The notes under the pieces were generated by a model. That model made no database searches. It was given only the letters and a program-made list of their open reading frames with translations, and was not told where the DNA came from. A stretch of 64,000 nucleotides of DNA, taken from the IMG/VR virus record IMGVR_UViG_3300032288_004964, positions 310,001 to 374,000 of that record, one strand, 5' to 3'. Of the stretch, positions 47-37,281 are shown piece after piece; the first letter of the stretch is position 1, and every line of letters starts with the position of its first letter. Both the position numbers and the translations under genes were made by a program.

Positions 47-748
47 TTATAAAAAATAATTAATCATTTCAGATGTTTTACCACCATTATTAAAAATCTT
101 ACAAAGATTCTTATATTCTATATCATTTACTTTATAAAGTTGTAAATCAGCACCATATAAAGTATTAATATCACCTGTATTTTCGTCTAAATAATCTTCT
201 GACCACATTGATGAGGTTGGTCTAAATCCAGTTACTTCATATAATCTTTTTAGACAATCTATAACTACTGGAAATTTATCTGGATTAAAAAGACCTAAAT
301 TTAGATAGATAACTGAGTAACCAGGAATGGTATTATTTAATATATTCTCTTGTAGTCTTTCAAGATAACTCTTACCAGATCTATTTTTTGATTCTTCAAC
401 CTCCGAAAAATAAACATCATTGTAGTTCTTACTAGCCAATTTAATCATATCATTTGATAAAGGTTTAGATAAATCAATAAACATATTTTTCCAAGTATCT
501 TGAGTGGATTCACATTCTTTATTAATCCAATTCTCTTCAAAACTCATATCATAAAATAATTGATGTCTAATAGGTCTTGTTATATTATCAGTTGTAAAAA
601 ATTGATATCCAGACTCATATAATTTACACTTAGATAGAGACTCCTCATCTGTTAAATCATAGAATAGTTCTTGAATATCCAATTCAGTCGGAAATTCAGA
701 TTCGGTAATAACTGATTCAAATAACTTATATGTTTTTAAATATTTCAT
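47..748 (-). CDS. Putative virion internal protein (N-terminal leader family)
   Basis: Starts MKYLKTYKLFES; IQELFYDLTDE motif shared with neighbouring paralogs. Confidence 0.55.
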   Translation of the reverse strand: MKYLKTYKLFESVITESEFPTELDIQELFYDLTDEESLSKCKLYESGYQFFTTDNITRPIRHQLFYDMSFEENWINKECESTQDTWKNMFIDLSKPLSNDMIKLASKNYNDVYFSEVEESKNRSGKSYLERLQENILNNTIPGYSVIYLNLGLFNPDKFPVVIDCLKRLYEVTGFRPTSSMWSEDYLDENTGDINTLYGADLQLYKVNDIEYKNLCKIFNNGGKTSEMINYFL

Positions 749-751
749 AAT

Positions 752-1198
752 TTAATTTTTAAATTCAGCTCCAAATCCACATTCTACTCCAAAAACTCTA
801 ACTTTAATTTCCACATATGATATTTTATAGTCTATCATATTGTATTCATCATCCATTAAATTTTCATTATTTATGACAACTTTTTCTTTTTGATTTACAT
901 GATGTTTTCTTGGAATATAAATCTCCCAACTACATCTACTATCTTTTAAGTAATTATCAACTCTAAGAATAAATTCCTTAATTTCATTTATATCAAAGAG
1001 CTCTTTATATCCTCTAAACTTGTCTATTGTAATTCTAAACTCAGGATAATATCCAAAACTTTTATAATATGTATCTTCGGTATCTTCTACTTTTACTCTG
1101 AATCCAGTATCTTGAAATTCAAGAGACATATCTATAATATCATTTTTAATATTATCTCCTCTAGATTCAAATAACTTATATGTTTTTAAATGTTTCAT
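752..1198 (-). CDS. Putative virion internal protein, leader + LExxDxG paralog family
   Basis: MKHLKTYKLFES; IIDMSLEFQDTGFRVKV. Confidence 0.55.
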   Translation of the reverse strand: MKHLKTYKLFESRGDNIKNDIIDMSLEFQDTGFRVKVEDTEDTYYKSFGYYPEFRITIDKFRGYKELFDINEIKEFILRVDNYLKDSRCSWEIYIPRKHHVNQKEKVVINNENLMDDEYNMIDYKISYVEIKVRVFGVECGFGAEFKN

Positions 1199-1704
1199 AA
1201 TTTTATCATTAATCTAAAGTTTGTAAAAGAAATATAATCACCAATACCATCAAAATCTTCTTCTTTACTACAACCAGTTAAAAACTCTACGCCACTAGCA
1301 AAAAATCTTAAAGGTGATTTATCTTTATCGGTTCTATATTTAGTTTCTTTATCTATTGGGTCATAAATTGAATATGTTGAATAATACCATTCGGTTAAAC
1401 TAATAATACTATCTTTTATTTCATACCAAAAGAAAAGATTACCTGGATAACCACCTTGTGGATTAACAACTCCTGGTATTTCTCTATTTCCAGCACCCCA
1501 AGGTTTACTAATATAAACTTCTAAATAAATATCAGTTCTTGTCTTATTAAAGTATCTTTCTGGGTCAATCTCTACATCCTTTCTAATTCTACTAATGTTA
1601 ACTTGTAGACCGTTATCTTCCAATTCAAGAAGAATATCATTAACATAATTTTCAAGATCATCAATACTAGATTCAAATATTTTATATGTTTTTAAATATC
1701 TCAT
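1195..1704 (-). CDS. Putative virion internal protein, leader + LExxDxG family
   Basis: MRYLKTYKIFES; VNDILLELEDNGLQVNI; 4-nt overlap with next gene. Confidence 0.55.
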   Translation of the reverse strand: MRYLKTYKIFESSIDDLENYVNDILLELEDNGLQVNISRIRKDVEIDPERYFNKTRTDIYLEVYISKPWGAGNREIPGVVNPQGGYPGNLFFWYEIKDSIISLTEWYYSTYSIYDPIDKETKYRTDKDKSPLRFFASGVEFLTGCSKEEDFDGIGDYISFTNFRLMIKL

Positions 1705-1705
1705 T

Positions 1706-2092
1706 TTACATTTTATATATTTTTATCATAATAAGACTAGCTTGTCTACCAATCAATTCTATATCTTTATGATCATCAAGATCAATCCATCTGCCATTCT
1801 CATAGAATAATTCAATGTATTCAGGGCCTGAAAATGATATGCTAATACCATATTCTTTTTCAGATATGTATTCTGATATTCTTTCTAATGTGTTTTTAAT
1901 ATTATCTGTTATATCAAATAAATGTGGCCATTTACCATGATCCGATTCTATATCAAAGTATCCTTCACCCCAATGTTTACAAGTTAGCCCTTCATCTTGG
2001 ATATCTAATAACATATCACTAACATCTTGTTCTATTTCTTTTAGATCAGGTTCGATACTTTCAAATATTTTATATGACTTTATATGTTTCAC
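1706..2092 (-). CDS. Putative virion internal protein, leader + LExxDxG family
   Basis: MKHIKSYKIFES; VSDMLLDIQDEGL. Confidence 0.55.
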   Translation of the reverse strand: MKHIKSYKIFESIEPDLKEIEQDVSDMLLDIQDEGLTCKHWGEGYFDIESDHGKWPHLFDITDNIKNTLERISEYISEKEYGISISFSGPEYIELFYENGRWIDLDDHKDIELIGRQASLIMIKIYKM

Positions 2093-2730
2093 TTTTCTTC
2101 TCTTCTTTTTTTCATTAAATCTTTAATGAATTCTTTTATCTCATCATTACAATCAGGAGTGGGTAAGAAACCATATCCTCTCATTCTTGAGTACCATTTG
2201 ATTTGTCCAATGACATTACCACCTTTACTAACATTATAAGTGTCAGTTTTAGCACCTTTCTTTTTAGGTTGTAAAGTAAACTTTAAGGTTGAAACTTCTT
2301 TTTTAGCCTCAAAAATGTCTTTATCAACCGTATATTTTCTTTGAAATGAAGATATTCTTGGATTATAGTAAATGAAAATATTAATATTGTATAATTCCTC
2401 ACCAGAAAACTCTTTCATAAAGTCATCTATATATAAATAGTCATCAGAATTAGGTATACCAATATCAATTGAATAATCACTATCTTTTAGGTAATCTTTT
2501 ACTCTCAATAAAACATCCATTATATCTTCTAATCTAAAAAATCGGTCTTGATTATCTTTAATATAAACTCTTAAGCAATCTGTAGGATCTATACCATTTT
2601 TATAGTAATTAATATTAGATGTAGTATATTCAATGTCACACAAATCTAATTCTAATAAGATATCTTCAATATCTACTTTTATATCAGAGGATATTGATTC
2701 AAATATTTTATATGTTTTTAAGTATCTCAT
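2089..2730 (-). CDS. Putative virion internal protein, leader family
   Basis: MRYLKTYKIFES; IEDILLELD. Confidence 0.55.
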   Translation of the reverse strand: MRYLKTYKIFESISSDIKVDIEDILLELDLCDIEYTTSNINYYKNGIDPTDCLRVYIKDNQDRFFRLEDIMDVLLRVKDYLKDSDYSIDIGIPNSDDYLYIDDFMKEFSGEELYNINIFIYYNPRISSFQRKYTVDKDIFEAKKEVSTLKFTLQPKKKGAKTDTYNVSKGGNVIGQIKWYSRMRGYGFLPTPDCNDEIKEFIKDLMKKRREEK

Positions 2731-3335
2731 CTGTTTACTATTGTTTCATCCGGGAACATCTCTATCAATTTAGATGATAATTCTCTTGTCATTTCAGGTT
2801 CCCAAGCTTTTATACCCCAGTTTTTAGATTCTCTTTGTGGTTGTATGGTAAACTCATAATTTAAAAATCCGCTTTTAACAATACTCATTTTATTTGGAAA
2901 GTATTTATTCCAAGTTATATTATTTTCTCCATGTGAGAATGTTTCACTGTAAACAAATATTTTATTACCTATCATCAAGTGGGTCTTTATTTCTGTTGCC
3001 ATCACTTTTATTTTCAACTCATTACCTTCATCTAAATAATCAAGTGAAAGGTCTTTAGCCATTTGTATTAGTTTCCAGTTTATCTCATCTTTTTTAATAT
3101 CTTCACAAGACAACCAATACTTATCAACTATCTTTTTTTCTTCATCAGAAATACTTTCTATTCCGTTATCTCCATGTACATCATATGGATTCTCATAATC
3201 ATACCCACCTTTTTTCCAAATAGCATACATAAGACCTGTATCTGGATCTAAAACATGACCAATACTATCTAACCTAATAAAGTTATCAGGTATAGTCATA
3301 GAATCATATTCTTCATATAGTTTTAAGTATTTCAT
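2727..3335 (-). CDS. Hypothetical protein with N-terminal leader
   Basis: MKYLKLYEEY; internal DLSLDYLDEG; TAATATATA just upstream on minus strand. Confidence 0.5.
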   Translation of the reverse strand: MKYLKLYEEYDSMTIPDNFIRLDSIGHVLDPDTGLMYAIWKKGGYDYENPYDVHGDNGIESISDEEKKIVDKYWLSCEDIKKDEINWKLIQMAKDLSLDYLDEGNELKIKVMATEIKTHLMIGNKIFVYSETFSHGENNITWNKYFPNKMSIVKSGFLNYEFTIQPQRESKNWGIKAWEPEMTRELSSKLIEMFPDETIVNR

Positions 3336-3345
3336 TGTCTATATA

Positions 3346-4233
3346 TTAAAAGTTCAGTAAGATTTTAATTGTATAGTCATAAATATCACTATCATCATCA
3401 AATTGTCTATTACCTCTTGAAACATCAAATATAACTTCTTCATAGTCTAAAGTTGGTAAAATAGAAGGTAAAACAGCATCTATATCTGATTCTAACTTTC
3501 TAAGATTCATTTTACCAGTTAAATGAGAATCACTATATCCACCAATATTAATAGTAACACAAGGTTTATACATATCTAATATTTTATCTACTGAATAATC
3601 TTTTTTCTTATTAATATCTGAACTATAGATAGTAACATCTCTTCTTTCATCTCCTTTAAATTTATCACCTAATTTAATACCATAATTATCAATATTAAAG
3701 TTAGCACAATTCCATTTTTTATCAGTTACATAATATTGGTCATCATCTCTTCTAAGAAGAATACTTGGATAACCTCCAATACTTAAAGTTGGATTAACAA
3801 TATCTTTTAATATAGAAATAATAATATTTAATTTATCACTATCTTTTGGTTTTGGAACAGATAGGAGTCCGTTATACTTTCTATTATTTGGTTTATCATG
3901 ATTCTCATAATCACCATAAGCAACACAACACATTGTCCATTTTTTCTTACTCTCAGGTATCTCATCATAGACATCATACATTCTATCATTGATATAATCA
4001 GTATCTACTTTAGACATTGCAATAAACATTCTATCAACTAAATCTTTAATCTTTTCCCAGTATCCTTCGCCAATAAAATGATCTGACCATTTTTTTAATG
4101 ATGATTCACTTACCATTGACTTTTGATTTTGATTCCATTGATATCTTTTTAGATCTTCAAACCAATCATAGATACCATATTTGGAAGATTCTGATTTTTC
4201 TAAAAAAGAATTATATTTTTCTAAATGTTTCAT
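3346..4233 (-). CDS. Hypothetical protein with N-terminal leader
   Basis: MKHLEKYNSFLE; 295-aa ORF in coupled operon. Confidence 0.5.
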   Translation of the reverse strand: MKHLEKYNSFLEKSESSKYGIYDWFEDLKRYQWNQNQKSMVSESSLKKWSDHFIGEGYWEKIKDLVDRMFIAMSKVDTDYINDRMYDVYDEIPESKKKWTMCCVAYGDYENHDKPNNRKYNGLLSVPKPKDSDKLNIIISILKDIVNPTLSIGGYPSILLRRDDDQYYVTDKKWNCANFNIDNYGIKLGDKFKGDERRDVTIYSSDINKKKDYSVDKILDMYKPCVTINIGGYSDSHLTGKMNLRKLESDIDAVLPSILPTLDYEEVIFDVSRGNRQFDDDSDIYDYTIKILLNF

Positions 4234-4646
4234 TTTGGAATTACTTTAATATTTACATTTCTAACATCACCAATCATTTCAGAATTCTCATCTAAGAAAT
4301 GACCATCTTTATAATTTAATATGTAAGCAAAATCTTTTTTCTCACCACCAGATACGGTTGCACTTATTCCCCAATTTAGTGATCTCACATAAGAAACAAT
4401 GTGTAGTATTTCATCTTCTATTTCACTTAACTTAAATGAGTCATTATTTATCTTATTGACATCAAGAATGATTCTTCTATCATCTTTATCATTACTTTTG
4501 AATATTGAAGGAACTCCAGGATCTTGACCTAATAATGTTTTAAATCCTTTTTCTTTGAAGTCAATTATAATATCTTCTATAGTTTGCATAATACCACTTC
4601 TCTCATCAGTAGATTCAAATATGTTATATTTCTTTAAGTATTTCAT
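4230..4646 (-). CDS. Putative virion internal protein, leader + LExxDxG family
   Basis: MKYLKKYNIFES; IEDIIIDFKEKGFK. Confidence 0.55.
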   Translation of the reverse strand: MKYLKKYNIFESTDERSGIMQTIEDIIIDFKEKGFKTLLGQDPGVPSIFKSNDKDDRRIILDVNKINNDSFKLSEIEDEILHIVSYVRSLNWGISATVSGGEKKDFAYILNYKDGHFLDENSEMIGDVRNVNIKVIPK

Positions 4647-5176
4647 ATTTCAAAGATAACTTTTTCACTATTTGGTCTTGAATAAACTATCTTGTTAATA
4701 TTCTTAACTGAGTATTTATAATTAGGATTTACATACTTCTTACCTTCTCCTTTATTTAAATAAGCGATTGTTATATGTGGTTTATAAGTTGGAAACTTAT
4801 CATTATTAGGTAGCTTTGATAACTCATCATGTAATTCTTGTAGACCAGAATCCGAAACAACATTGAATTTCAAAACATCAAATTGTTCATTTTCAAAAAG
4901 ATTTATACCATCTATATCAATATGTAATTCACCATTAAACTTATCTAAAATAGATTTAACTTGATCTTCAGTAACATCTTTTTCAAGTCCATATAACAAT
5001 GTCAGATGTGGATATTCTTGAATACCGTGAGAATCATCACCTCCTGTATAAACATCTTTAGGATCAATAGAATTAGTTAATTCATCCCAATTACTTACAG
5101 GAACTTCAATCATTACACACCCGTATTCATATCCAGATGATTCTTTTATAAATTGTAAATAGTTTTTAATTATCAT
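4643..5176 (-). CDS. 2H phosphoesterase (Acb1/T4 57B-like) with N-terminal leader
   Basis: Two HxT motifs (PHLTLLYG, PHITIAY) about 77 aa apart; leader MIIKNYLQFIKES. Confidence 0.75.
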   Translation of the reverse strand: MIIKNYLQFIKESSGYEYGCVMIEVPVSNWDELTNSIDPKDVYTGGDDSHGIQEYPHLTLLYGLEKDVTEDQVKSILDKFNGELHIDIDGINLFENEQFDVLKFNVVSDSGLQELHDELSKLPNNDKFPTYKPHITIAYLNKGEGKKYVNPNYKYSVKNINKIVYSRPNSEKVIFEI

Positions 5177-5688
5177 ATACTACCTTGTATTATTATTCTT
5201 TTTTCACCACCTCTATTATTATAAGAGAATTTGAATCCAATTCCAATTTCACTTTGTAATCTTTTTACAGCTACTAAGAAATCTTCAGCTTCTTCTCTTT
5301 CCTTGCTACCTTCTTTAAATTCTTCCTTTTCATCAGACATTGACCAATCATTTTTAGAAAATAATAAAGCTCTATTACTTCCTGAAATAGGGTTTAAATT
5401 ATGTCCTTTAAGCTCTTTAGCCTCCCAAGTTATTTCACCATCTGAATTTATTTCACCAGTCCAATCTAATAAATTTCTTCTATCCGATGGTTGATAAACT
5501 TCCTCTCTAGGTACCATTCTACAATTGAATTGTGGATTTTTCCAAATAGATATACCTGGGTAAGAAACATCTGATATCCAATACCAACCATTATCTTCAA
5601 ATTCTAAGAAACAATTTTTAATTGTATCAAGAACTTGATTATAGATTTGCTCTTCAATATTTTCATTAAATTTTCTAAGATATTTCAT
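5173..5688 (-). CDS. Hypothetical protein, leader + LExxDxG family
   Basis: MKYLRKFNEN; IKNCFLEFEDNGW. Confidence 0.5.
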   Translation of the reverse strand: MKYLRKFNENIEEQIYNQVLDTIKNCFLEFEDNGWYWISDVSYPGISIWKNPQFNCRMVPREEVYQPSDRRNLLDWTGEINSDGEITWEAKELKGHNLNPISGSNRALLFSKNDWSMSDEKEEFKEGSKEREEAEDFLVAVKRLQSEIGIGFKFSYNNRGGEKRIIIQGSI

Positions 5689-5764
5689 AATGATATATAT
5701 TTTATTTCTATTTTGGTAAAGTGGAAAAGATTAATTATCTTTGATAAAATTAAAAATAATAGAT

Positions 5765-5938
5765 ATGACAGAAAGATTTTCAATGAGAGAAACGCTTAAG
5801 AGTAAGTTCGGTGAAGCTGAAAAAAGTGTTAAAGGAAGTAGAGCAACAAAAAGAGCAACTGAAAAAGTTAAGTCTTCTGATACTGGAAAGTATAAAGTCA
5901 AAATTGTTGATGGTGTTAAGTATATGGTTTTAAAATAA
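5765..5938 (+). CDS. Small basic hypothetical protein
   Basis: ATG at 5765 (MTERF...) preferred over TTG 5741; followed by bidirectional terminator. Confidence 0.5.
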   Translation: MTERFSMRETLKSKFGEAEKSVKGSRATKRATEKVKSSDTGKYKVKIVDGVKYMVLK

Positions 5939-5965
5939 AAAAGAGGTCTATTGACCTCTTTTTTT
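5937..5965. terminator. Bidirectional intrinsic terminator
   Basis: A-tract GAGGTC-TATT-GACCTC T-tract between convergent genes. Confidence 0.8.
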
Positions 5966-6752
5966 ATAAATTGTATTTAATATCTACCTTTTTAGGATCT
6001 GAATATAAATTCTTATTATAGTATTGGTCAAATACTTCTCTGTATTTTTGTTCCCATTCTTCTATATTAGGAATATTCATATCTTCCATTTTCTTTCCTA
6101 ATCCAGTTGACATATAAGCTTGTAACTCATCTGGTAAAACATGGTCAGCATAGCCATAATCAGTTATACATTTAAACATTGAATCTTTAACAACCCCGTC
6201 ACATTCACTATTTAATTTAGACATAGCTTCTTTATAATCAGTCAAAGTAAACCACATAGCATGAGCAAATTCATGTTCAAGTAATCTATTTGATAATTCA
6301 TCTACACCTAATAAGTAATATTTACTATCTCCCTCAATTTCTTTTATAGTATTAATAATAGATAACATAATTTTATCATAGTTATTAATTTCATCTTCTG
6401 GTATACCAAACATACATTCTTCTAAAATAGTAGATGGTATATTAAATCCTGACCAATCAGCACCATAAGTAAATTCTTGTTTACCATAATGTTGTTTGTA
6501 AAGATCTTGGAATCTTGAAAATTTGAATTGTTTACTGATTATTTCTTCAAATGCACTTTCATAAAATTCTTGTGGTCTTAGAAATAACATAGCTCTTGAA
6601 TGAGAGTCTTCTACTTTAACTGCCCATATGTGTTCACCAACATGATATAATTCAATAGATTGAAGATATAGTTCCATTTGTGGAGCTAGTAATCTATTAG
6701 GGTCAGTTATTAACTTTTCTAAAAATAATTTATAGGATTTAATTAGTTTCAT
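5964..6752 (-). CDS. Putative zincin-like metalloprotein with N-terminal leader
   Basis: HEFAH (HExxH) plus downstream DELQAY; leader MKLIKSYKLFLE. Confidence 0.55.
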   Translation of the reverse strand: MKLIKSYKLFLEKLITDPNRLLAPQMELYLQSIELYHVGEHIWAVKVEDSHSRAMLFLRPQEFYESAFEEIISKQFKFSRFQDLYKQHYGKQEFTYGADWSGFNIPSTILEECMFGIPEDEINNYDKIMLSIINTIKEIEGDSKYYLLGVDELSNRLLEHEFAHAMWFTLTDYKEAMSKLNSECDGVVKDSMFKCITDYGYADHVLPDELQAYMSTGLGKKMEDMNIPNIEEWEQKYREVFDQYYNKNLYSDPKKVDIKYNL

Positions 6753-6767
6753 AGTTATTTATTTTTT

Positions 6768-7017
6768 TTATAATTCTGATTCATCTTTTAATAAATCAAA
6801 AACAGCCTTAGCGCCTTCAATAAAACTTTCCTTAGATATGTTGAATTTTTCATCTGATTCACCTTCTTGTCTATATACCCAAGCCCATTCTGAAGACATA
6901 TCTTCAAATTATTCCTGTTTTAGTATTTTCAATCCAAATATAGTTATAGTTATCTGCCATGATTTTTGATTGATCAGATGATTCTAAGCTCTCATTAAAT
7001 TTCTTTAAGTGTTTCAT
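6768..7017 (-). pseudogene. Leader-bearing gene apparently broken into two short ORFs (7017-6904, 37 aa; 6899-6768, 43 aa)
   Basis: Manual translation: MKHLKKFNESLESS...GII* then, in another frame, MSSEWAWVYRQEG...KDESEL*. Confidence 0.4.
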
Positions 7018-7019
7018 AA

Positions 7020-7325
7020 TTATTCAACTTCATATTTTGTAACTTGTTTCAATTTAACAACATCCTTACCATCAACTAACTGGAATTTAACTTTCTTATC
7101 GTCAAAGTTATACGGATCAGAATTAAATATCTCCATCTGTTCTTCTGTTACTGGATATTCCTCACCCCAAACATCTCTACTATAAACACTCCATTCATAT
7201 CCATCAACACCAAGAGTGCCAACTTTAATTTCGGGATTTTCTGTTTTTATATTCTTCGAAGCGTTCTCTTGTTCATCACGCATTTGTTGGTCATAAAAGT
7301 TTTCAAATATTTTAATGTGTTTCAT
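7020..7325 (-). CDS. Hypothetical protein with N-terminal leader
   Basis: MKHIKIFENF. Confidence 0.5.
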   Translation of the reverse strand: MKHIKIFENFYDQQMRDEQENASKNIKTENPEIKVGTLGVDGYEWSVYSRDVWGEEYPVTEEQMEIFNSDPYNFDDKKVKFQLVDGKDVVKLKQVTKYEVE

Positions 7326-7333
7326 ATATTTAT

Positions 7334-8155
7334 TTATTTTTTAAACTTGTCTAATAATCTTTTGAATTCATATTCAGTTATCTCTTTACTTACAGGTGTG
7401 CCATAAATAGTTGTTGAATATTCAATGAAATTAGCCATTAAATCTTTTATGTTATTACCAAGATTTTTAAGCATACCCTCAAATCCATATTTTTTATAAC
7501 CATTATATGCCATCCAAGCAGACATTACTTCTAATAAAGATAAATCGCTTCCGAATAATCCTTCATTTAAGTGTTTCTTCTTTTTAGATTCTCCTGAGAA
7601 TGGACTCATTAAATGTTTTAAGTTCCAAGAAGGAACAAACCTCTTATTATGTTTCTCAAAGTCTTCATATGATTCAATACCAGAATCAATAGGATTTTGA
7701 ATATATTGAATATTAGCACCTTGCTTATTCATATCAGAGATTCTATTTCCAATATCAGTTTTAGCTGACATCTTCATAACTCTTTTAAGTTGATCTACTG
7801 TGTGTTGTCTTGGTAGTGATTCATTAGTAGGTTCAACATCTGAGAAATCTACCGACCCATCTTCATTAAATATAACAAATCCTATACCATTTTCAATTGG
7901 TAAAGTTCCTAACTCTACTAACTTATTAAAATCCTCAGTTCCAATACTTTCTGGTCCAAATTCCCAAACACGAGAAACACCACCATCTTTTATTACAAAT
8001 TGTATATCAACTTGTCCAGATGATTCAGTTGCCTTATTTTGTCTAATAATTCTTCTAATTCCAGTCTTATTAGAAACATATTCTTTTTCAGCACCGTATT
8101 TAGATCTTGCTCTAACTATTTTCATTATTCTCCAAATTCCTTTTTCTCCATCCAA
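7334..8155 (-). CDS. Hypothetical protein
   Basis: 273-aa ORF in operon; real start may be the second Met (MKIVRAR). Confidence 0.5.
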   Translation of the reverse strand: MDGEKGIWRIMKIVRARSKYGAEKEYVSNKTGIRRIIRQNKATESSGQVDIQFVIKDGGVSRVWEFGPESIGTEDFNKLVELGTLPIENGIGFVIFNEDGSVDFSDVEPTNESLPRQHTVDQLKRVMKMSAKTDIGNRISDMNKQGANIQYIQNPIDSGIESYEDFEKHNKRFVPSWNLKHLMSPFSGESKKKKHLNEGLFGSDLSLLEVMSAWMAYNGYKKYGFEGMLKNLGNNIKDLMANFIEYSTTIYGTPVSKEITEYEFKRLLDKFKK

Positions 8156-8523
8156 TTAGAAAGTTCTTCATCATCCCAAAGTTTTTCTTTTAGATATTTC
8201 ATAACATTTTCTTGTATCATTTCTTCAGCTTTGTAGAAATCTTCAATATCAGATGATTTAATTATTTCTTTAAGAAGTTCATATACTTCATCTAATTTAG
8301 AAAATAATTCGTCATTTTCTTGAAAACTCTCAGCTAAAAACTTCTCACCATCTAATTTATTATTAGAAGGTTTAACAACTCTCATAGAAACATCTGGATC
8401 ACTTAATGATTTATCAGCATCTAATTTCTTATCAGTCTTTGGTTTAACCAATTCCTGCTTCTTCATATCCTTAGAAAGCTTTTGAGCTTTATCATTGATT
8501 GGATGTTTTTTAATATGTTTCAT
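8125..8523 (-). CDS. Hypothetical protein, leader-like start
   Basis: Start moved to MKHIKKH (8523), because the upstream extension crosses the AATATATA motif and the nrdB terminator. Confidence 0.5.
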   Translation of the reverse strand: MKHIKKHPINDKAQKLSKDMKKQELVKPKTDKKLDADKSLSDPDVSMRVVKPSNNKLDGEKFLAESFQENDELFSKLDEVYELLKEIIKSSDIEDFYKAEEMIQENVMKYLKEKLWDDEELSNWMEKKEFGE

Positions 8524-8558
8524 AGTTAATATTATTTTATAAAAGTATATATTAAAAT

Positions 8559-8587
8559 AAAAACCCCAGTTTTTAGACCGGGGTTTA
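8559..8587 (-). terminator. Intrinsic terminator after nrdB
   Basis: AAAACCCCAGT...ACCGGGGTTT inverted repeat. Confidence 0.55.
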
Positions 8588-8608
8588 ACAAAATACAAAA
8601 ATTACCTA

Positions 8609-9574
8609 TTAGAAATCTTCATCTAATTTATCAAAATCAATTTCTTTATCAGAAGTTTTTTGATATTCAGCAACACGCTTCTCAAAGAAGTTACTTTTAT
8701 TTTGTAAAGATAACATCTCCATGAAATCAAATGGATTCTCAGAATTATAAACTTTCTGACAACCTAATTCAACTAACCAAAAGTCAGCAACATATTCAAT
8801 GTATTGTTGCATCAACTTGTCATTCATTCCAATTAATGAAACTGGAAGAGATTCTGTAATAAACTTTCTTTCAATATCAACAGCTGAGCAAATAATTTCT
8901 TTAATTCTATCAGGTGATACCTTATTTTGAATGTGTTTATTGTGTAATAAACAAGCAAACTGACAGTGTAAACCTTCATCTCTTGAAATTAATTCATTAG
9001 AGAAAGCTAACCCTGGCATTAAACCTCTTTTCTTTAACCAGAAGATTGAACAAAATGATCCTGAGAAGAAGATACCTTCAACTGCCGCAAAAGCAATTAA
9101 TCTTTCAGCAAATGAATCAGAACCAATCCATTTCAAAGCCCAATCAGCTTTATTCTTAATAGATTCATAGTTATCAATAGCATGAAATAATTTATCTTTT
9201 TCAGCCGAATCTTTAATGTAAGTATCAATTAATAATGAATAGGTTTCAGAGTGTATATTCTCCATCATTATTTGAAAACCATAAAAAGATTTTGCTTCAG
9301 GGTATTGAACTTCTTTTAGGAAGTTTTCAGCCAGATTCTCATTTACTATACCATCTGATGCAGCAAAGAAAGCTAATATCATTTTAATGAAGTGCTTTTC
9401 ATTATCATTTAATTTTTCATTCCAATCTGTTAAGTCTTGAGCTAAGTCAATTTCTTCCGCAGTCCAAAATGAATGTTGCTGATTTTTGTACATGTCCCAA
9501 ATATCGTGATATTTTAAGGGAAACATTACAAAACGGTCTTTGTTCTCTTGTAATATGTGTTCTGTGTTTTTCAT
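8609..9574 (-). CDS. nrdB: Ribonucleotide reductase class Ia beta subunit
   Basis: [47 protein letters not shown] diiron motifs. Confidence 0.97.
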
Positions 9575-9635
9575 AATTTAGTTTATTTATTATTATTTAT
9601 ATCGATCTATATTTGAATAGTTTAATATCTTTTAG

Positions 9636-9643
9636 TATATTTG
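9636..9643 (+). promoter_or_regulatory. Bacteroidota-type -7 promoter element TAnnTTTG (early/host RNAP)
   Basis: TATATTTG upstream of + strand operon. Same element at 13751, 17276, 18430, 19958, 28662, 44275, 50272, 53852, 60115, 62206, 63936 and on minus strand 39741-39748. Confidence 0.7.
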
Positions 9644-9668
9644 TATTTATTAAAAAAGTTTAAGTCCA

Positions 9669-10223
9669 ATGAATAGTATAAACGCAAATAAAAAAATGAA
9701 ATGGTCTAAAAACCGGAAGAGATTGCGTGATGCTTTGGAGAGTAATGCTTACGGTAACCAACTGGGTAAAATGTTAGAGAATTTTCAATTACTTAAACCA
9801 GAAGAGTTCTTACAATGCAAAAATAATTTACTAAAATTAGCATTGAAAAATGCCTCAAAAGAATGTGCTGTCTTTCTAATAGAAAAAGAAGCTAGAGCAA
9901 ATATTGAGTTCTGTTTGTTAGAAACCGATTATAATAAAATTGATAAAGTTTATAACTTAATATCTGAATTAAATTCAAAATATGATTTCACAGGGCCTTC
10001 TTTGCCTCAAAAGAAAACTTTAATAGCTAGATTAATTAGTCCTGAAAAAGTCTCAGAAAATTCTGATAGAGTTGATTATCTATTCAAAATGATTTGCGAA
10101 GGATTTTTCACATCAGAAGATGTTATGGAACAAATAGAAATATCTTACAAAGATAAACAAGAACAAAAAAGACATTTTACCTCCCTGTTCAGGGATTTAA
10201 AACTAAGAGAATTAGGAATATGA
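9669..10223 (+). CDS. Hypothetical protein with C-terminal tag
   Basis: Ends FRDLKLRELGI. Confidence 0.55.
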   Translation: MNSINANKKMKWSKNRKRLRDALESNAYGNQLGKMLENFQLLKPEEFLQCKNNLLKLALKNASKECAVFLIEKEARANIEFCLLETDYNKIDKVYNLISELNSKYDFTGPSLPQKKTLIARLISPEKVSENSDRVDYLFKMICEGFFTSEDVMEQIEISYKDKQEQKRHFTSLFRDLKLRELGI

Positions 10224-10465
10224 GGAATTTATATAAAATGAAATATGAATACTCACGTCAACCTTGGTATAATGGTGATGATGTATTTGAGCTTGACTTT
10301 ATTCATACAGATAGATATTTTTCACAATTTGGAACAGATTGTTCTTGGACTAATTTTAGAACTAAAGAAACTATTAATATCTGGGATATGTGTATGAGAA
10401 AAATAACTGATGATGAAGCTAAGCAATTAGTAAGAGAGTATAATCTAAATCAATTGGGAATATGA
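10220..10465 (+). CDS. Hypothetical protein with C-terminal tag
   Basis: Ends VREYNLNQLGI. Confidence 0.55.
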   Translation: MRNLYKMKYEYSRQPWYNGDDVFELDFIHTDRYFSQFGTDCSWTNFRTKETINIWDMCMRKITDDEAKQLVREYNLNQLGI

Positions 10466-10881
10466 AATTATATTATGATGGTATAGGATATCCTTGTAAA
10501 TTGAAATCTGAAATGAAAGGTAATAATACTTGGTATAGTATGGAACCAGTAAAAGTTAAAGTAACTTTACCTAAATATATCTATGATAAGATTTTATTAG
10601 ATATCAAATTAGACAATGAGAATGATACTTTAAGGGATATATTTAGATTTAAATTACTACTTCAAAGAGGAGAGTTGTCAAGAAATAAAGATAAGTGGAG
10701 TAGACATTCTCAAGTTGTTCAAAATGAACTTTGGGAATTAGAAACATATTTAGATAGATTAACAATTACTTCTAAATTCAGAAATGGTGATGTTACTGCT
10801 ATATTTGGTTTATCAATATTTTCTGAAATAGAATTAGACAAATCAGATATTAGAGAAATTATATTAAATGAACTTATTTAA
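10462..10881 (+). CDS. Hypothetical protein with C-terminal tag
   Basis: Ends IREIILNELI. Confidence 0.55.
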   Translation: MKLYYDGIGYPCKLKSEMKGNNTWYSMEPVKVKVTLPKYIYDKILLDIKLDNENDTLRDIFRFKLLLQRGELSRNKDKWSRHSQVVQNELWELETYLDRLTITSKFRNGDVTAIFGLSIFSEIELDKSDIREIILNELI

Positions 10882-10883
10882 AA

Positions 10884-10972
10884 GCGAAAACACCGAGGAG
10901 CGAATTCGGTGTTCTCTATAGCCTAAACTATACCGGTCCTAAGCTGGGGGATCGCTCTCCCCTCCGGTTCAT
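10884..10972 (-). ncRNA. Candidate structured small RNA with complementarity to 23S rRNA H69-H71
   Basis: GC-rich island with four stems; G-U pairs favour the minus strand; TATATATA motif upstream (10977-10989); final hairpin followed by U-run. Confidence 0.55.
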
Positions 10973-11055
10973 ACATTATATATAAATAATATAAACTTTC
11001 TTTTTTAAAAATATAAAACATAAGTAAATTAATGTCAAACTAAAAAACAAACAAA

Positions 11056-11367
11056 ATGGTAAAAAATGAAATTAAAGTAGATTTCTCTAACACAGAAGAA
11101 CTAAAAAACATTATTGAGAAAGCTTATTTTACTGAAGGAATGGGTGGAAAAATCCTTGGAAAAAACCACTTCATTAAAATTAATGAATCTGATGATATTC
11201 ATTACACAATCTTCAAAGACATGAATAGTGTGACTGTAAAGTTACACAATCCAGAAATCATTGATGGATCTATGAGATTCATGATTGATGAAACACAAGG
11301 AGAAGTAAGATTGTATCCTATTTCAATCTATTGTATTAAAGAAGAAAACAAGTATATTTTCTACTAA
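11056..11367 (+). CDS. Hypothetical protein
   Basis: 103-aa ORF, A-rich leader. Confidence 0.55.
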   Translation: MVKNEIKVDFSNTEELKNIIEKAYFTEGMGGKILGKNHFIKINESDDIHYTIFKDMNSVTVKLHNPEIIDGSMRFMIDETQGEVRLYPISIYCIKEENKYIFY

Positions 11368-18858: not shown

Positions 18859-19087
18859 CATATCATATAAGGTAGCAAATACTAAACTTTATAGAGAATC
18901 TAAAGAACTAAAACTTGAATTTCTTTATGAAACAGGAGATGCTGCTTATTTTTGTTTAGATGATGGTGGTTATCTTTATTATCTAATAGAAACATTTACC
19001 AATGGAAAAATTATGGTATTAGATGAGGATAGTCATGTTTATTATGACAATAATAGAATATTAAACCTTTTAAGATTAAAGGTTTAG
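18848..19087 (+). CDS. Hypothetical protein
   Basis: 79-aa ORF overlapping previous stop. Confidence 0.4.
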   Translation: METNISYKVANTKLYRESKELKLEFLYETGDAAYFCLDDGGYLYYLIETFTNGKIMVLDEDSHVYYDNNRILNLLRLKV

Positions 19088-19985: not shown

Positions 19986-20579
19986 ATGAATATTGTTATA
20001 CTTGGGGGACCAGGGAGTGGAAAAGGAACTATCTGTGAAAAACTTGTAGAAGAGTTTAATTATAAAATGGTTTGTGCTGGTGACTTACTTAGAGAAGAAA
20101 AAGCATCTGGTTCAGAATTAGGAAAGCAAATTGCTAAATTGATTGATGCTGGTAACTTAGTTCCTGATAATGTTATAACTGACATTATCTATAATGAATT
20201 TAGGAAACCTATTAGACTTGGTAAATTCTTTTTAGTAGATGGTTACCCAAGAAGTATAAAACAAGCAATTAGTCTAAGTCAAATGATTAATGTTCAAATT
20301 GTTCTTTGGTTAGAAGTAAGTGATGAAACAACTATTAAAAGAAATTTGAATAGAGGTTTAACATCAGGTAGACCAGATGATGCAAATGAAGAAATCATTA
20401 AAAAGAGACTAGAAAATTATAAAGAAATGTCAGTTCCTATTAAAAGGTATTACAATGACTGTATTGTAGAGATTGATGGTGAGGGAACACCAGATGAAGT
20501 TTATCAAAGGATTATAGACACCTTGTTTGAAAATGTAAGAGAACCAAGAGATGTCACTGATATTTTAGATGAAGAGTAA
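19986..20579 (+). CDS. adk: Adenylate kinase
   Basis: GGPGSGKGT P-loop, GDLLREE, LVDGYPR, GRPDD. Confidence 0.93.
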   Translation: MNIVILGGPGSGKGTICEKLVEEFNYKMVCAGDLLREEKASGSELGKQIAKLIDAGNLVPDNVITDIIYNEFRKPIRLGKFFLVDGYPRSIKQAISLSQMINVQIVLWLEVSDETTIKRNLNRGLTSGRPDDANEEIIKKRLENYKEMSVPIKRYYNDCIVEIDGEGTPDEVYQRIIDTLFENVREPRDVTDILDEE

Positions 20580-20583
20580 AATG

Positions 20584-20609
20584 AAATCCAGATTTAATCT
20601 GGATTTTTT
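20584..20609 (+). terminator. Terminator after adk
   Basis: AAATCCAGAT-TTA-ATCTGGATTTTTT. Confidence 0.65.
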
Positions 20610-20622
20610 AATATATAAAGTA

Positions 20623-21963
20623 ATGAAACTATTTAGATATAAAGAATTTATAAAAGAAGGGTTAGAAGTTAAAAATTCAATTCCTACTTATGAACAAGCA
20701 TTAGAATTATGTTCTATTGAAGAATCTCCATTTTATGAATCAAAAATGGAAGTAGATGAATATAATGTATCTGTTTTTAATTATAGACTTGCTCAATACA
20801 AAGACTTTTCAAATCCTATTCCTGAAAAGCCAGAATTAAAAGGATTTGAAATGAGAGGTTTAACTTTTATATTTAATAAAGATGGTTCTTTATTTAAAAG
20901 ATATGTGTTGCTTGAAAAGTTTTTTAATTTAAATCAAGTACCAGACTCTTTATACTCTGTTGTTAAAAACTACAAAATTAAGTTTGTTAATAATAAAGAA
21001 GATGGTTCAATTGCTTCTTTTGTTAAACTACCAAATGGTAAAGTTGTTGGTAAATCCAAAATGGGATTTGATAATGACCAAGCTAATGGTATAAATAGAA
21101 TTTACAAAACTAATTCAGATATTAAAAAATTTGTTGATTGGGCTTTAGATAATGATATAGTCCCAGTATTCGAATATGTTGCTCCAAACAACCGTATTGT
21201 TCTAAGATATCCAGGTGAAGAATTAATCTTATTAAGATTAAGAGATAATAAAACAGGTAAGCATATTGATATTAGAGACCACTTGGATAAAGTTGGTAAT
21301 ATTAGAATTGCTCCTTTTGAAGATGAAATTAAAGATTTAGATACATTAATTGAATTAAACGCTACTCAAGTTGATAAAGAAGGTTCTATTGTTACTTGTG
21401 AAGATGAGAATGGTCATGACTTTTTCTTTAAGTTAAAAACACCTTGGTACTGTGAAAGACATGGTTTATTAACAAATGATATTTATAGAGAACATATTAT
21501 TATTAATTATATCTTAGATGATAAGATAGATGATATATTAGGTCAAATACCAGAAGAAGAAGTTGAGGCTCATCAAAGAATTAATAAGATTATTTCTATT
21601 GTCAAAAAAGCAATTTCTGACAAAGTGTCTGAAATTGAAAAATCTTATGATGATTTTATTAAATCAGGTATTTCTAAAAAAGATTATGCTATAAAAAATA
21701 GAGTTGGTAACACTAACTTTGGTTTTGTTATGAATATGGTTAAAGCAAATGATTTAAGAAAGATGTCTAAAGAAGAAATATTAGATATCTATGATAATAT
21801 GGAAGAATATGAAAAGGCATTACAAAGATGTCAACCATATGAAATGGCTAAAGAATGGATTAAAGATTTAACTAAGAGATTAAACCTTTCTAGAGAATGG
21901 CTAAAGAAAAAAGATCCAACTCTTTTCTTTCAAGAACCAGAAGAAAGTGATGATGATAATTAA
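20623..21963 (+). CDS. T4 Rnl1-type RNA ligase with N-terminal leader
   Basis: EMRGLTF, KFFNLNQ, KEDGS (adenylation Lys), FEYVAPNNRIV, EG.., KLKTPWY; start moved to MKLFRYKEFIKE after terminator and TAATATATA. Confidence 0.85.
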   Translation: MKLFRYKEFIKEGLEVKNSIPTYEQALELCSIEESPFYESKMEVDEYNVSVFNYRLAQYKDFSNPIPEKPELKGFEMRGLTFIFNKDGSLFKRYVLLEKFFNLNQVPDSLYSVVKNYKIKFVNNKEDGSIASFVKLPNGKVVGKSKMGFDNDQANGINRIYKTNSDIKKFVDWALDNDIVPVFEYVAPNNRIVLRYPGEELILLRLRDNKTGKHIDIRDHLDKVGNIRIAPFEDEIKDLDTLIELNATQVDKEGSIVTCEDENGHDFFFKLKTPWYCERHGLLTNDIYREHIIINYILDDKIDDILGQIPEEEVEAHQRINKIISIVKKAISDKVSEIEKSYDDFIKSGISKKDYAIKNRVGNTNFGFVMNMVKANDLRKMSKEEILDIYDNMEEYEKALQRCQPYEMAKEWIKDLTKRLNLSREWLKKKDPTLFFQEPEESDDDN

Positions 21964-30473: not shown

Positions 30474-30518
30474 ATTAGTATATATTAAAAATATAAATTA
30501 AAACTTAATATATACTTT

Positions 30519-30881: not shown

Positions 30882-30883
30882 AT

Positions 30884-30913
30884 AAAAAGAGAGTCAAATG
30901 ACTCTCTTTTTTT
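30884..30913. terminator. Bidirectional intrinsic terminator
   Basis: A5 GAGAGTC-AAAT-GACTCTC T7. Confidence 0.85.
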
Positions 30914-31382: not shown

Positions 31383-31384
31383 AA

Positions 31385-32410: not shown

Positions 32411-32429
32411 ATCTTTTATTAAATCTAAT

Positions 32430-34122: not shown

Positions 34123-34133
34123 TTGTTTATATT

Positions 34134-34529: not shown

Positions 34530-34530
34530 A

Positions 34531-37252: not shown

Positions 37253-37281
37253 ATCAATTATATAATTGAGATTAGAAAAGT

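What the first reader, a model, noticed from the sequence alone, without database searches (positions are those of the whole stretch)
4643..5176. Acb1-like 2H phosphoesterase carrying the packaging leader
Seen: two HxT motifs and the leader MIIKNYLQFIKES. Established: phage 2H enzymes (Acb1/T4 57B) degrade CBASS cyclic nucleotides. Inference: a virion-delivered anti-CBASS or anti-type III CRISPR nuclease active from the moment of injection.
Basis: partly seen in the sequence, partly recalled or inferred. Interest (0 to 1): 0.6.

Follow-up and report, generated by a model that had tools for sequence, protein, structure and literature searches.

The report
Capsid-tagged 2H phosphoesterase, huge phage
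A giant T4-like phage encodes a small RNA/nucleotide-cutting enzyme whose first 12 residues look like the tag that phage T4 uses to load proteins into its head, so it is probably injected with the DNA; its relatives point more to repair of cut tRNA ends than to destruction of bacterial alarm nucleotides.

Summary
Window 4643-5176 (minus strand) is a 177-aa ORF with HLT (57-59) and HIT (134-136), a confident 2H phosphoesterase fold, and a disordered 14-residue N-terminal extension.

The extension belongs to a genome-wide tag. About 60 of 454 genes (about 75 with weaker variants) in this 385-kb phage start with it.

The genome has a T4-type head module: Gp23 capsid protein, Gp20 portal, and a gp21-like prohead protease. 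The target's tag (Y6, F9, I10, E12, then S13) repeats the spacing of the T4 capsid-targeting sequence (Y4, F7, I8, E10). These residues are invariant or nearly so in 95 homologues.

Tagged genes share a promoter-like motif with the head genes. The 2H gene carries the tag only in phages whose neighbouring genes carry it too. So "packaging leader" is well supported by analogy but not shown.

"Acb1-like" is only loosely true. The Acb1 Pfam score is below cut-off, and LigT-type enzymes are as close or closer.

Leaderless relatives are fused to CCA-adding enzymes and to polyvalent proteins. Tagged relatives are fused to RNase T-like exonucleases. This favours RNA 3'-end healing over CBASS-signal cleavage, which is not excluded.

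The parts
4643..5176 (-). CDS, 177 aa: N-terminal tag plus 2H (HxT/HxT) phosphoesterase domain
5138..5176 (-). Codons 1-13, MIIKNYLQFIKES: predicted capsid-targeting propeptide, with predicted cleavage after E12 (I-K-E then S)
   Evidence: Leader HMM 9.8 bits, reached by 1 of 3146 null windows. E12 is invariant and K4, Y6, F9 at least 90% conserved in 95 homologues. pLDDT below 50. Same spacing as T4 CTS Y4/F7/I8/E10 (PMC9026906).
5000..5008 (-). First catalytic motif H57-L-T59
   Evidence: Read from the sequence. H57 and T59 are invariant.
4769..4777 (-). Second catalytic motif H134-I-T136, inside F128-x-x-Y131-x-P-H-I-T-I-A-Y, which resembles the T4 Acb1 stretch F107...H113
   Evidence: Read from the sequence. 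hhalign to T4 57B: E 2.3e-5 over 34 columns.
5173..5688 (-). Upstream gene of the operon, 171 aa, tag MKYLRKFNENIEE; its stop overlaps the target's start codon
   Evidence: No Pfam or PHROG match.
5694..5701 (-). Promoter-like motif AATATATA, 5 nt before the ATG of the first gene of the operon
   Evidence: Upstream sequence listed. Motif statistics.
4230..4646 (-). Downstream gene, 138 aa, tag MKYLKKYNIFES; 4-nt overlap with the target
3346..4233 (-). Next gene of the operon, 295 aa, tag MKHLEKYNSFLEK
47..3335 (-). Five further tagged genes of the same-strand array (47-748, 752-1198, 1195-1704, 2089-2730, 2727-3335)
5964..7325 (-). Two further tagged genes upstream of the operon (5964-6752, 7020-7325)
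20569..21963 (+). T4 Rnl1-type RNA ligase without a tag: a possible cytoplasmic RNA-repair partner
   Evidence: PF09511 at 67.8-69.7 bits.

Best explanation
The gene encodes a two-part protein in a 385-kb T4-like phage.

Residues 1-12 are a T4-type capsid-targeting propeptide. It is a short amphipathic segment with aromatic residues three positions apart (Y6, F9), followed by I10-K11-E12.

Proposed mechanism, all inferred:
1. The gene is transcribed from a promoter-like motif that also precedes the head genes.
2. The tag docks the protein onto the scaffolding core of the prohead.
3. The gp21-like prohead protease removes the tag after E12.
4. The roughly 19-kDa mature enzyme stays in the head and is ejected into the cell with the DNA.

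Residues 15-177 are a 2H phosphoesterase. Its HxT/HxT tetrad cuts or opens a phosphodiester next to a ribose 2'-OH through a 2',3'-cyclic phosphate, without metal.

The most likely substrate is the 2',3'-cyclic-phosphate or damaged 3' end of RNA, above all tRNA. On this reading it works with the phage's tagged CCA-adding enzyme to undo cuts made by host metal-independent defence RNases.

My estimates for each step: 2H enzyme 0.95; member of a genome-wide N-terminal tag 0.9; tag means capsid targeting plus cleavage 0.55; RNA-end substrate 0.45, against cyclic-oligonucleotide substrate 0.3.
For: Enzyme.
- Pfam and PHROG matches.
- Confident model with the tag left disordered.
- Invariant H57, T59, H134, T136.

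Tag as a family.
- 48 strict plus about 12 short-form tagged genes among 454. Scores are bimodal: 18.6 or more, against 9.2 or less.
- Synonymous codon use inside the tag equals the genome's (K AAA 0.79 against 0.78; Y TAT 0.81 against 0.84; F TTT 0.80 against 0.79). Selection is therefore on the peptide.
- No tag on the RNR small subunit, GMP reductase, adenylate kinase, Rnl1 ligase or UvdE, nor on the genes that read as DnaK and DnaJ by their N-termini.

Tag as a capsid-targeting sequence.
- T4-type head module in the genome: Gp23 at 99.9 bits, Gp20 portal at 189.8 bits.
- A gp21-like protease: BLASTP E 9e-5, with GEFDHP matching T4 GELNH85P and FVSSRA matching T4 GVSS140RG.
- T4 IPII and IPIII start MKTYQEFIAE then A. 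In T4, residues 4 and 7 target and residues 8 and 10 direct processing (PMC9026906). gp21 cuts after E in I/LxE (PMC12991175).
- A hydrophobic-x-E site with E at position 8-14 occurs in 53 of 60 tags against 113 of 362 other N-termini.
- The AATATATA motif lies within 25 nt upstream of 25 of 60 tagged genes against 48 of 394 others (Fisher 2e-7). In almost all of these it ends 4-7 nt before the ATG. The same motif lies 20-30 nt upstream of the MCP, protease and portal genes, and directly upstream of the gp15-like and tail-fibre genes.
- The tag is modular. In 27 distinct loci with a tagged 2H, 118 of 628 flanking ORFs are tagged. In 32 loci with an untagged 2H, 2 of 571 are. L075 gained a long-type tag independently.

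Injected-effector context. The same 2H clade sits in giant polyvalent proteins with ART-PolyVal (L054, L094). That class is predicted to be packaged and injected (PMC5512222).

RNA-end substrate.
- Leaderless relatives (36-46% identity) are fused to CCA-adding enzyme domains in at least three lineages and in both orders (L071, L074, L098, L054, L066, L095).
- Tagged relatives are fused to an RNase_T exonuclease (L023, L024, L033, L029).
- In this genome a CCA-adding enzyme (105.9 bits) and a NUDIX plus P-loop kinase protein also carry the tag.
Against: - No virion proteome, no cleavage data and no expression timing exist for this uncultured phage.
- The tag HMM scores the T4 CTS at only 3.7-5.6 bits. 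The likeness to T4 is one of pattern and spacing, not a significant alignment.
- 13-16% of all genes being head cargo is far more than in T4.
- One tagged protein is a PQ-loop membrane protein, an odd capsid cargo.
- The protease match is below Pfam's cut-off (19.9-22.3 bits).
- The promoter-like motif also precedes a gene read as a topoisomerase subunit from its N-terminus only, so its temporal class is not proven.
- The complex prediction of protease with the 2H protein gave no answer.
- Substrate: fusion partners act on RNA 3' ends, but a 2H plus exonuclease pair would equally suit stepwise destruction of cyclic oligonucleotides.
- The second-motif region (F-x-x-Y-x-P-H-I-T) is closer to Acb1 than to LigT.
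- No Tpt1 or RtcB is present, and the Rnl1 ligase is untagged.
Confidence: 0.4

Rival explanations
1. This is a virion-delivered Acb1-type nuclease that linearises CBASS or type III CRISPR cyclic oligonucleotides (3'3'-cGAMP, cA3) from the moment of injection.
For: - Foldseek ranks Acb1 7T27 first by E-value (7.7e-6), with the highest sequence identity among hits (18-22%).
- 94 of 95 family members hit the Pfam Acb1 model at E of 1e-3 or better (best 2.1e-9).
- The stretch F128-x-x-Y131-x-P-H-I-T aligns to T4 Acb1 F107...H113.
- F94 aligns to Acb1 W74.
- 2H domains of polyvalent proteins were proposed to degrade defence nucleotides (PMC5512222, section 20).
- The evidence for packaging is the same as in the best explanation.
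Against: - The target's Acb1 score (25.6) is below the cut-off of 27, and PF13563 scores higher.
- The PDB profile search puts LigT-type PF0027 and PH0099 at E 1e-5 to 1e-6, against 0.005 for Acb1.
- The C-terminal lid with W147 is missing: the protein ends before it.
- T4 Acb1 is not delivered. Its activity starts about 15 min into infection, matching the late onset of CBASS (PMC9117128), so delivery at time zero has no obvious benefit.
- The fusion partners of the clade are tRNA or RNA 3'-end enzymes.
Confidence: 0.22
2. The tag is not a packaging signal. It could be a handle for the phage's own DnaK/DnaJ, a signal for another cell location or complex, or an expression-related N-terminus. 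On this reading the 2H enzyme is made in the infected cell and works in the cytoplasm. There it would act as a cyclic phosphodiesterase of a Trl1-like heal-and-seal pathway with the phage's Rnl1-type ligase and kinases.
For: - 13-16% of genes carry the tag.
- Tagged proteins include a PQ-loop membrane protein, a NUDIX-kinase and a CCA-adding enzyme, which look like housekeeping or repair enzymes.
- Genes that read as DnaK and DnaJ by their N-termini lie in the window.
- An Rnl1-type ligase lies 15 kb away.
- The tag is only weakly similar to the T4 CTS by score.
Against: - The strong enrichment of hydrophobic-x-E sites at the end of the tag (88% against 31%) is expected for a cleaved propeptide, not for a chaperone or expression tag.
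- The T4-type protease, scaffold and capsid are present.
- Codon usage shows peptide-level, not nucleotide-level, selection.
- The promoter-like motif is shared with head genes.
- The same 2H clade occurs in polyvalent proteins predicted to be injected.
- The ligase itself lacks the tag, and no Tpt1 is present.
Confidence: 0.25
3. The 2H domain acts as a nuclease or 2',5'-phosphodiesterase rather than a healer. It would be either a Usb1-like 3'-5' exoribonuclease that attacks host RNA, or an enzyme that cuts 2'-5'-linked signals such as 3'2'-cGAMP, which Acb1 cannot cleave.
For: - Usb1 and AKAP18 structures tie for the best Z (12.7-12.9).
- 12 of 95 members touch the AKAP7 model and 2 touch coronavirus NS2A.
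- Iyer et al. proposed these two roles for 2H domains of polyvalent proteins (PMC5512222, section 20).
Against: - Identity to Usb1 is only 9-10%.
- Matches to the 2',5'-PDE families are few and weak.
- Fusion to a CCA-adding enzyme fits repair better than attack.
Confidence: 0.1

Closest known systems
Phage T4 internal proteins IPI, IPII, IPIII and their capsid-targeting sequence (CTS)
   Same: - A short N-terminal propeptide on otherwise unrelated small proteins.
- Aromatic residues three positions apart, followed by I/L-x-E.
- T4-type Gp23, Gp20 and a gp21-like protease in the same genome.
- Genes lie in plastic arrays of small ORFs.
   Different: - The tag is 2-3 residues longer at its N-terminus (M-K-[YH]-[LI]-K... 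or M-x-I-K...).
- About 60-75 tagged genes, against a handful in T4.
- The cargo includes recognisable enzymes (2H, CCA-adding, NUDIX-kinase).
- No experimental proof of packaging.
Acb1 (T4 gene 57B; Erwinia phage FBB1, PDB 7T26/7T27), the anti-CBASS 2H nuclease
   Same: - 2H fold and HxT/HxT tetrad.
- Compact, phage-encoded protein.
- The motif F-x-x-Y-x-P-H-I-T around the second histidine.
- An aromatic residue at the W74 position.
   Different: - Below the Pfam Acb1 cut-off.
- The N-terminal half does not align by profile comparison.
- No C-terminal lid tryptophan.
- Carries a cleavable-looking tag.
- Relatives are fused to RNA 3'-end enzymes.
- T4 Acb1 activity appears about 15 min into infection and is not known to be packaged.
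LigT/ThpR-type 2',3'-cyclic phosphodiesterases (P. furiosus PF0027 2FYH, P. horikoshii PH0099 1VDX, E. coli LigT 5LDM)
   Same: - Best sequence-profile hits in the PDB (E 4.5e-6 and 1.1e-5).
- An RNA-end healing chemistry that fits the fusion partners.
   Different: - 14-19% identity.
- A family-specific G-C-V-M first strand and invariant W30 and F-E-N motifs.
- An N-terminal tag.
2H domains of phage polyvalent proteins and MuF or portal fusions (Iyer, Burroughs and Aravind 2017)
   Same: - The same 2H clade (36-46% identity) occurs inside 1500-2700-aa multidomain phage proteins with ART-PolyVal, RES and CCA-adding domains.
- That class is predicted to be packaged and injected.
   Different: Here the domain is a solo protein. 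Its delivery would depend on a short T4-type tag rather than on covalent linkage to a large virion protein.

Membership tests
2H phosphoesterase superfamily | Two H-x-T/S motifs on facing strands | tested here: met
   HLT 57-59 and HIT 134-136, invariant in 95 homologues.
2H phosphoesterase superfamily | Bilobed alpha+beta 2H fold | tested here: met
2H phosphoesterase superfamily | Profile score above the curated cut-off | tested here: met
   PF13563 at 36.5 bits against cut-off 27; PF02834 at 24.4 against 23.3.
Acb1 (PF23474) | Profile score above Pfam's gathering cut-off | tested here: not met
   25.6 bits against cut-off 27, covering residues 90-147 only. T4 57B scores 202.7 bits. 94 of 95 relatives match at E of 1e-3 or better, best 2.1e-9.
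Acb1 (PF23474) | HxT/HxT catalytic tetrad (H44, T46, H113, T115) | tested here: met
   All four residues align.
Acb1 (PF23474) | Aromatic base-stacking residues Y12, W74, F107, W147 and adenine contact E141 (PMC9117128) | tested here: inconclusive
   By MAFFT and hhalign, F94 aligns to W74 and F128 to F107. Y12 has only a nearby Y16 or Y18. The E141 equivalent (E172) is not conserved. W147 has no counterpart.
Acb1 (PF23474) | C-terminal lid (residues 145-152) closing over the ligand | tested here: not met
   The protein ends at the position aligned to T4 D146, so there is no lid tryptophan.
Acb1 (PF23474) | Cleavage of 3'3'-cGAMP, cUA or cA3 3' of adenosine | not testable with these tools
   Needs an enzyme assay.
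T4-type CTS internal proteins | N-terminal propeptide of 10-19 residues with targeting aromatics three positions apart | tested here: met
   Y6 and F9, against T4 Y4 and F7 (PMC9026906). Both are at least 90% conserved in 95 homologues.
T4-type CTS internal proteins | I/L-x-E processing site at the end of the propeptide | tested here: met
   I10-K11-E12 then S13. 53 of 60 tags have a hydrophobic-x-E site with E at position 8-14, against 113 of 362 controls.
T4-type CTS internal proteins | T4-type prohead (Gp23, Gp20) and gp21 protease in the same phage | tested here: met
   Gp23 at 99.9 bits and Gp20 at 189.8 bits. Protease BLASTP E 9e-5 with His and Ser motifs kept, but Pfam S77 at 19.9-22.3 bits is below cut-off 27.
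T4-type CTS internal proteins | Significant sequence similarity of the tag to the T4 CTS | tested here: inconclusive
   The tag HMM scores T4 IPI at 5.6 bits and IPII/IPIII at 3.7-3.8 bits, in the same register K-x-[YF]-x-E-F-[IL]. The segment is too short for significance.
T4-type CTS internal proteins | Presence in the virion with a trimmed N-terminus; ejection into the host | not testable with these tools
   The phage is uncultured and no proteome exists.
Phage RNA-repair or polyvalent 2H domains | Covalent or operonic link to RNA-end enzymes | tested here: met
   Relatives are fused to PolyA_pol/CCA-adding domains, tRNA_lig_CPD, NTP_transf_2 and RNase_T. The target itself is solo. A tagged CCA-adding enzyme lies elsewhere in the genome.

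The most novel reading that the evidence does not exclude
The N-terminal tag is a readable address label for head cargo. This huge T4-like phage and its relatives would load 60-75 different proteins (about 15% of their genes) into the capsid. Among them would be a ready-made tRNA 3'-end repair kit: the 2H phosphodiesterase, a CCA-adding enzyme and a NUDIX-kinase. The kit would be injected with the DNA so that host RNase-based abortive defences are undone before any phage gene is expressed. The tag would then allow the injected-effector repertoire of uncultured T4-like phages to be listed from sequence alone.
Probability: 0.3. Interest if true: 0.8.

Novelty: new variant of a known kind. Interest (0 to 1): 0.62.

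Why it matters
If the tag works as in T4, it marks from sequence alone which proteins an uncultured 385-kb phage carries into the cell.

That would turn a mass of hypothetical small ORFs into a defined list of candidate injected counter-defence and takeover proteins.

It would also be the first case of nucleic-acid repair or nuclease enzymes, such as a 2H phosphoesterase and a CCA-adding enzyme, delivered by a T4-type capsid-targeting sequence rather than as domains of giant polyvalent proteins.

It gives two delivery solutions for the same enzyme clade that can be compared directly: a short tag or a covalent fusion.

For the Acb1 field it is a caution. A phage 2H protein with two HxT motifs is not by that fact an anti-CBASS nuclease.

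Tried and rejected
- Full-text search for the leader strings (MKYLK and similar) returned only unrelated papers.
- Searches for 'capsid targeting' with 'jumbo', and for T4 57B in virion proteomes, found no report of such a tag expansion or of packaged Acb1. In phage G the Acb1 homologue was not among the proteins detected by proteomics.
- Complex prediction of the gp21-like protease region (residues 1-330) with the 2H protein scored 0.00. The verdict was no answer, so it is not evidence either way.
- I considered that the roughly 300-aa homologues (P0020, P0029) are fusions of the 2H with the downstream 138-aa gene. BLASTP shows no similarity.
- I looked in this genome for an RNase T-like counterpart of the fused relatives. 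None was found at E below 1e-3.
- I considered that the tag is a nucleotide-level element such as a translation or RNA signal. This was rejected because synonymous sites follow genome-wide codon usage.
- Structure search could not assign a 2H subfamily. All subfamilies tie.
- A 40-kb stretch of Tenacibaculum phage pT24 shows no clear copy of this tag. Only a loose M-K...Y-[IVL]-x-E pattern was seen.
- No Tpt1 or RtcB was found, so a complete Trl1-like or RtcB pathway is not evident.
- Not used: the large protein search and the sequencing-run tools.
Full report
**What is there**

Window 4643-5176 holds a 177-aa ORF on the minus strand. Its ATG overlaps the stop of the upstream gene as ATGA, and its own stop overlaps the next start. 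It is therefore the second gene of a tightly coupled same-strand operon. HLT (residues 57-59) and HIT (134-136) can be read directly from the sequence.

The window is bases 310001-374000 of a 385,333-bp virus record with 28.7% G+C. Its nearest public relatives are uncultured phages of 634-642 kb.

**The enzyme**

- Pfam gives 2_5_RNA_ligase2 at 36.5 bits (cut-off 27), LigT_PEase at 24.4 (cut-off 23.3) and Acb1 at 25.6 (cut-off 27, not reached). PHROG 755 matches at E 1.2e-10.
- 190 homologues were found. Almost all are 176-183 aa; a minority are longer, up to 309 aa.
- A model built on 95 of them has mean pLDDT 86. Only residues 1-14 fall below 50.
- Foldseek lists Acb1 7T27 first (E 7.7e-6), but Usb1, AKAP18, LigT and CPDase lie within a factor of ten.
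- A profile of the family finds the archaeal LigT-type proteins 2FYH and 1VDX at E 4.5e-6 and 1.1e-5, and Acb1 7T26 at 0.005.
- Against T4 57B, only 34 columns around the second histidine align (E 2.3e-5). There the motif F-x-x-Y-x-P-H-I-T is shared.
- In a multiple alignment, F94 falls on Acb1 W74 and F128 on F107. The protein ends before the lid tryptophan W147 (Acb1 features from PMC9117128).
- Across the family, PF13563 matches 95 of 95 members, Acb1 94 of 95 (best 2.1e-9) and LigT_PEase 88 of 95.

The protein is a sure 2H phosphoesterase of a clade of its own. It is not a member of Acb1 by the curated test.

**The leader is a genome-wide tag**

- I called 454 non-overlapping ORFs in the genome.
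- A gapless matrix seeded on M-[KR]-[YH]-[LI]-K-x-[YF] converges on 48 genes. A clear score gap separates them (18.6 or more, against 9.2 or less).
- An HMM with indels adds a shorter form, M-(K)-I-K-K-[YF]-x-x-F-x-x-E. This form includes the target at 9.8 bits, a score reached by 1 of 3146 internal control windows.
- Weaker variants bring the total to about 75.
- Tagged proteins are mostly small and unannotated, and often lie in arrays. The target sits in a run of eleven tagged genes at window 47-7325.
- Synonymous codon choice inside the tag matches the rest of the genome, so the peptide is what is conserved.
- In the 2H family, E12 is invariant and K4, Y6 and F9 are at least 90% conserved, against a mean column identity of 57%. 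All four are invariant in a 23-sequence alignment.

**Why I read the tag as a capsid-targeting propeptide**

1. The genome has a T4-type head module.
   - A Gp23 major capsid protein (99.9 bits) and a Gp20 portal (189.8 bits).
   - A 712-aa protein whose N-terminus matches T4 gp21 (BLASTP E 9e-5; Pfam S77 at 19.9-22.3 bits, below cut-off).
   - That protein keeps the catalytic His and Ser contexts: GEFDHP against GELNH85P, and FVSSRA against GVSS140RG.
2. T4 IPII and IPIII begin MKTYQEFIAE, then A. IPI begins MKTFKEFTST.
   - In T4 the first ten residues suffice for head loading.
   - Residues 4 and 7 carry targeting, and residues 8 and 10 carry processing (PMC9026906).
   - gp21 cuts after Glu in I/LxE (PMC12991175).
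   - The target has Y6, F9, I10 and E12, followed by S13. That is the same spacing shifted by two.
3. A hydrophobic-x-E site with the Glu at position 8-14 ends 53 of 60 tags, against 113 of 362 other N-termini. The next residue is most often Ser.
4. A promoter-like motif, AATATATA[G/C/A], lies within 25 nt upstream of 25 of 60 tagged genes against 48 of 394 others (Fisher 2e-7).
   - In almost all of these it ends 4-7 nt before the ATG, mostly 4-5 nt.
   - The same motif lies 20-30 nt upstream of the capsid, protease and portal genes, and directly upstream of a gp15-like tail gene and a tail-fibre gene.
   - The target's operon starts with it (window 5694-5701).
5. The tag is modular and depends on the system around it.
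   - Among 59 distinct related viral loci, the 27 with a tagged 2H have 118 tagged ORFs among 628 neighbours. The 32 with an untagged 2H have 2 among 571.
   - Leaderless homologues begin directly at the first strand. Examples are Maribacter phage Colly_1 and LR756508.
   - One locus (L075) carries a long-type tag on a 2H from the other half of the tree.
6. By homology with T4 gp23 (cut after L-T-E65), the capsid protein has I-N-E at the matching place, a tripeptide also used in six tags. This point is weak.

**Caveats**

- The tag HMM gives the T4 sequences only 3.7-5.6 bits.
- The number of tagged genes is very large.
- One tagged protein has a PQ-loop membrane domain.
- The motif's temporal class is inferred, not shown.
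- No protein-level data exist.
- The complex prediction gave no answer.

**What the enzyme most likely does**

Context speaks for RNA 3' ends.
- In related phage contigs the same 2H clade (36-46% identity to the query) is fused to class II CCA-adding enzyme domains (PolyA_pol head, RNA-binding, tRNA_NucTran2_2). This occurs in both orders and in at least three lineages (L071, L074, L098, L054, L066, L095).
- It is also fused to a second, fungal tRNA-ligase-type CPD domain (L095) and to an NTP_transf_2 domain (L096).
- Inside the tagged clade, several members are tag-2H-RNase_T fusions with a DEDD exonuclease motif (L023, L024, L033, L029).
- In this genome a CCA-adding enzyme (105.9 bits) and a NUDIX plus AAA_33 kinase protein also carry the tag.
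- An untagged Rnl1-type RNA ligase lies at window 20569-21963.
- Some of the fused relatives are giant polyvalent proteins with ART-PolyVal and RES domains (L054, L094). That class is predicted to be packaged and injected. Its 2H domains were discussed as RNases or as degraders of defence nucleotides (PMC5512222, section 20).

Two delivery routes for one enzyme clade, a short tag here and a covalent fusion there, agree with an early, injected role. The partners favour healing of 2',3'-cyclic-phosphate RNA ends before trimming or CCA re-addition.

Cyclic-oligonucleotide cleavage remains possible. A 2H plus exonuclease pair could also destroy such signals, and the second-motif region is Acb1-like. 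T4 Acb1 activity begins only about 15 min after infection (PMC9117128). Delivery at time zero is therefore not part of the known Acb1 mechanism.

**Known or new**

T4 capsid-targeting sequences, 2H enzymes, Acb1 and polyvalent proteins are all described. I found no report in the searched library of a huge T4-like phage with 60-75 tagged genes, or of a 2H or CCA-adding enzyme bearing such a tag. That library is limited to open-access papers.

I class the finding as a new variant of a known kind. All steps after 'it is a 2H enzyme with a shared N-terminal tag' are inference.

Noticed in passing
G000 genome-wide; in the window e.g. 5694-5701 (-); upstream of G000 30982-32664, 32744-34882, 35912-37615: A promoter-like motif, (T)AATATATA[G/C/A], lies within 25 nt upstream of 73 of 454 genes. 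In 59 of them it ends 4-5 nt before the ATG, which suggests nearly leaderless mRNAs. The same motif lies 20-30 nt upstream of the capsid, protease and portal genes. It recalls the T4 late promoter TATAAATA.
   Followed up: partly
L003 13592-14411 (T4 ipI and 57B): T4 Acb1 (57B) starts MMEFKDFST, which resembles the neighbouring IPI capsid-targeting sequence MKTFKEFTST. Both have aromatic residues at positions 4 and 7. The Pfam Acb1 domain begins only at T4 residue 9. Whether T4 Acb1 is itself head-targeted is unknown to me.
   Followed up: partly
L005 (LR756508) 2190-11233: A 484-kb relative has a different shared N-terminus, M-[KR]-L-K-K-[VIL]-L-x-E, on the neighbours of its untagged 2H gene. 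Lineage-specific N-terminal tags may be common in huge phages.
   Followed up: no
L054 2595-9791; L066 4883-10798; L067 3614-11680; L095 5798-11230: These are giant proteins of 1810-2688 aa. L054 combines CCA-adding, ART-PolyVal, RES, DUF5661 and 2H domains. L066 and L095 combine CCA-adding and 2H domains. L067 was not scanned against Pfam. L066, L067 and L095 begin MTY-x-[DE]-F or MIYNEY, which looks like the T4 capsid-targeting sequence.
   Followed up: partly
G000 142092-142766 (-): A tagged 224-aa protein has a PQ-loop membrane repeat (48.7 bits). This is an odd cargo for a capsid and a caveat for the packaging reading.
   Followed up: no
G000 383013-384179 (+) and 278396-279478 (+): A tagged CCA-adding/poly(A) polymerase-family protein (105.9 bits) and a tagged NUDIX plus P-loop kinase (AAA_33) fusion. 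With the 2H they form a set of tagged RNA-end enzymes.
   Followed up: partly
window 13957-15015 (-), 22913-24802 (+), 19986-20579 (+), 11503-12585 (+), 28674-29600 (+): Genes that read as DnaJ and DnaK by their N-termini (not scanned against Pfam), plus Pfam-confirmed adenylate kinase, GMP reductase-like and UvdE genes. None carries the tag.
   Followed up: partly
window 45752-50264 (+): Two large ORFs (562 and 898 aa) begin with hydrophobic signal-peptide-like N-termini of the kind common in Bacteroidota. Together with Tenacibaculum and Maribacter phage relatives, this hints at a Flavobacteriia host.
   Followed up: no
G000 30491-30907 (-): A tagged 138-aa gene with the promoter-like motif sits directly downstream of the major capsid gene inside the head module, like an internal-protein gene.
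   Followed up: no
window 19084-19902 (-): A NUMOD3 / TnsA-like endonuclease ORF, probably a homing endonuclease, lies just upstream of the adenylate kinase and RNA ligase genes on the opposite strand.
   Followed up: no
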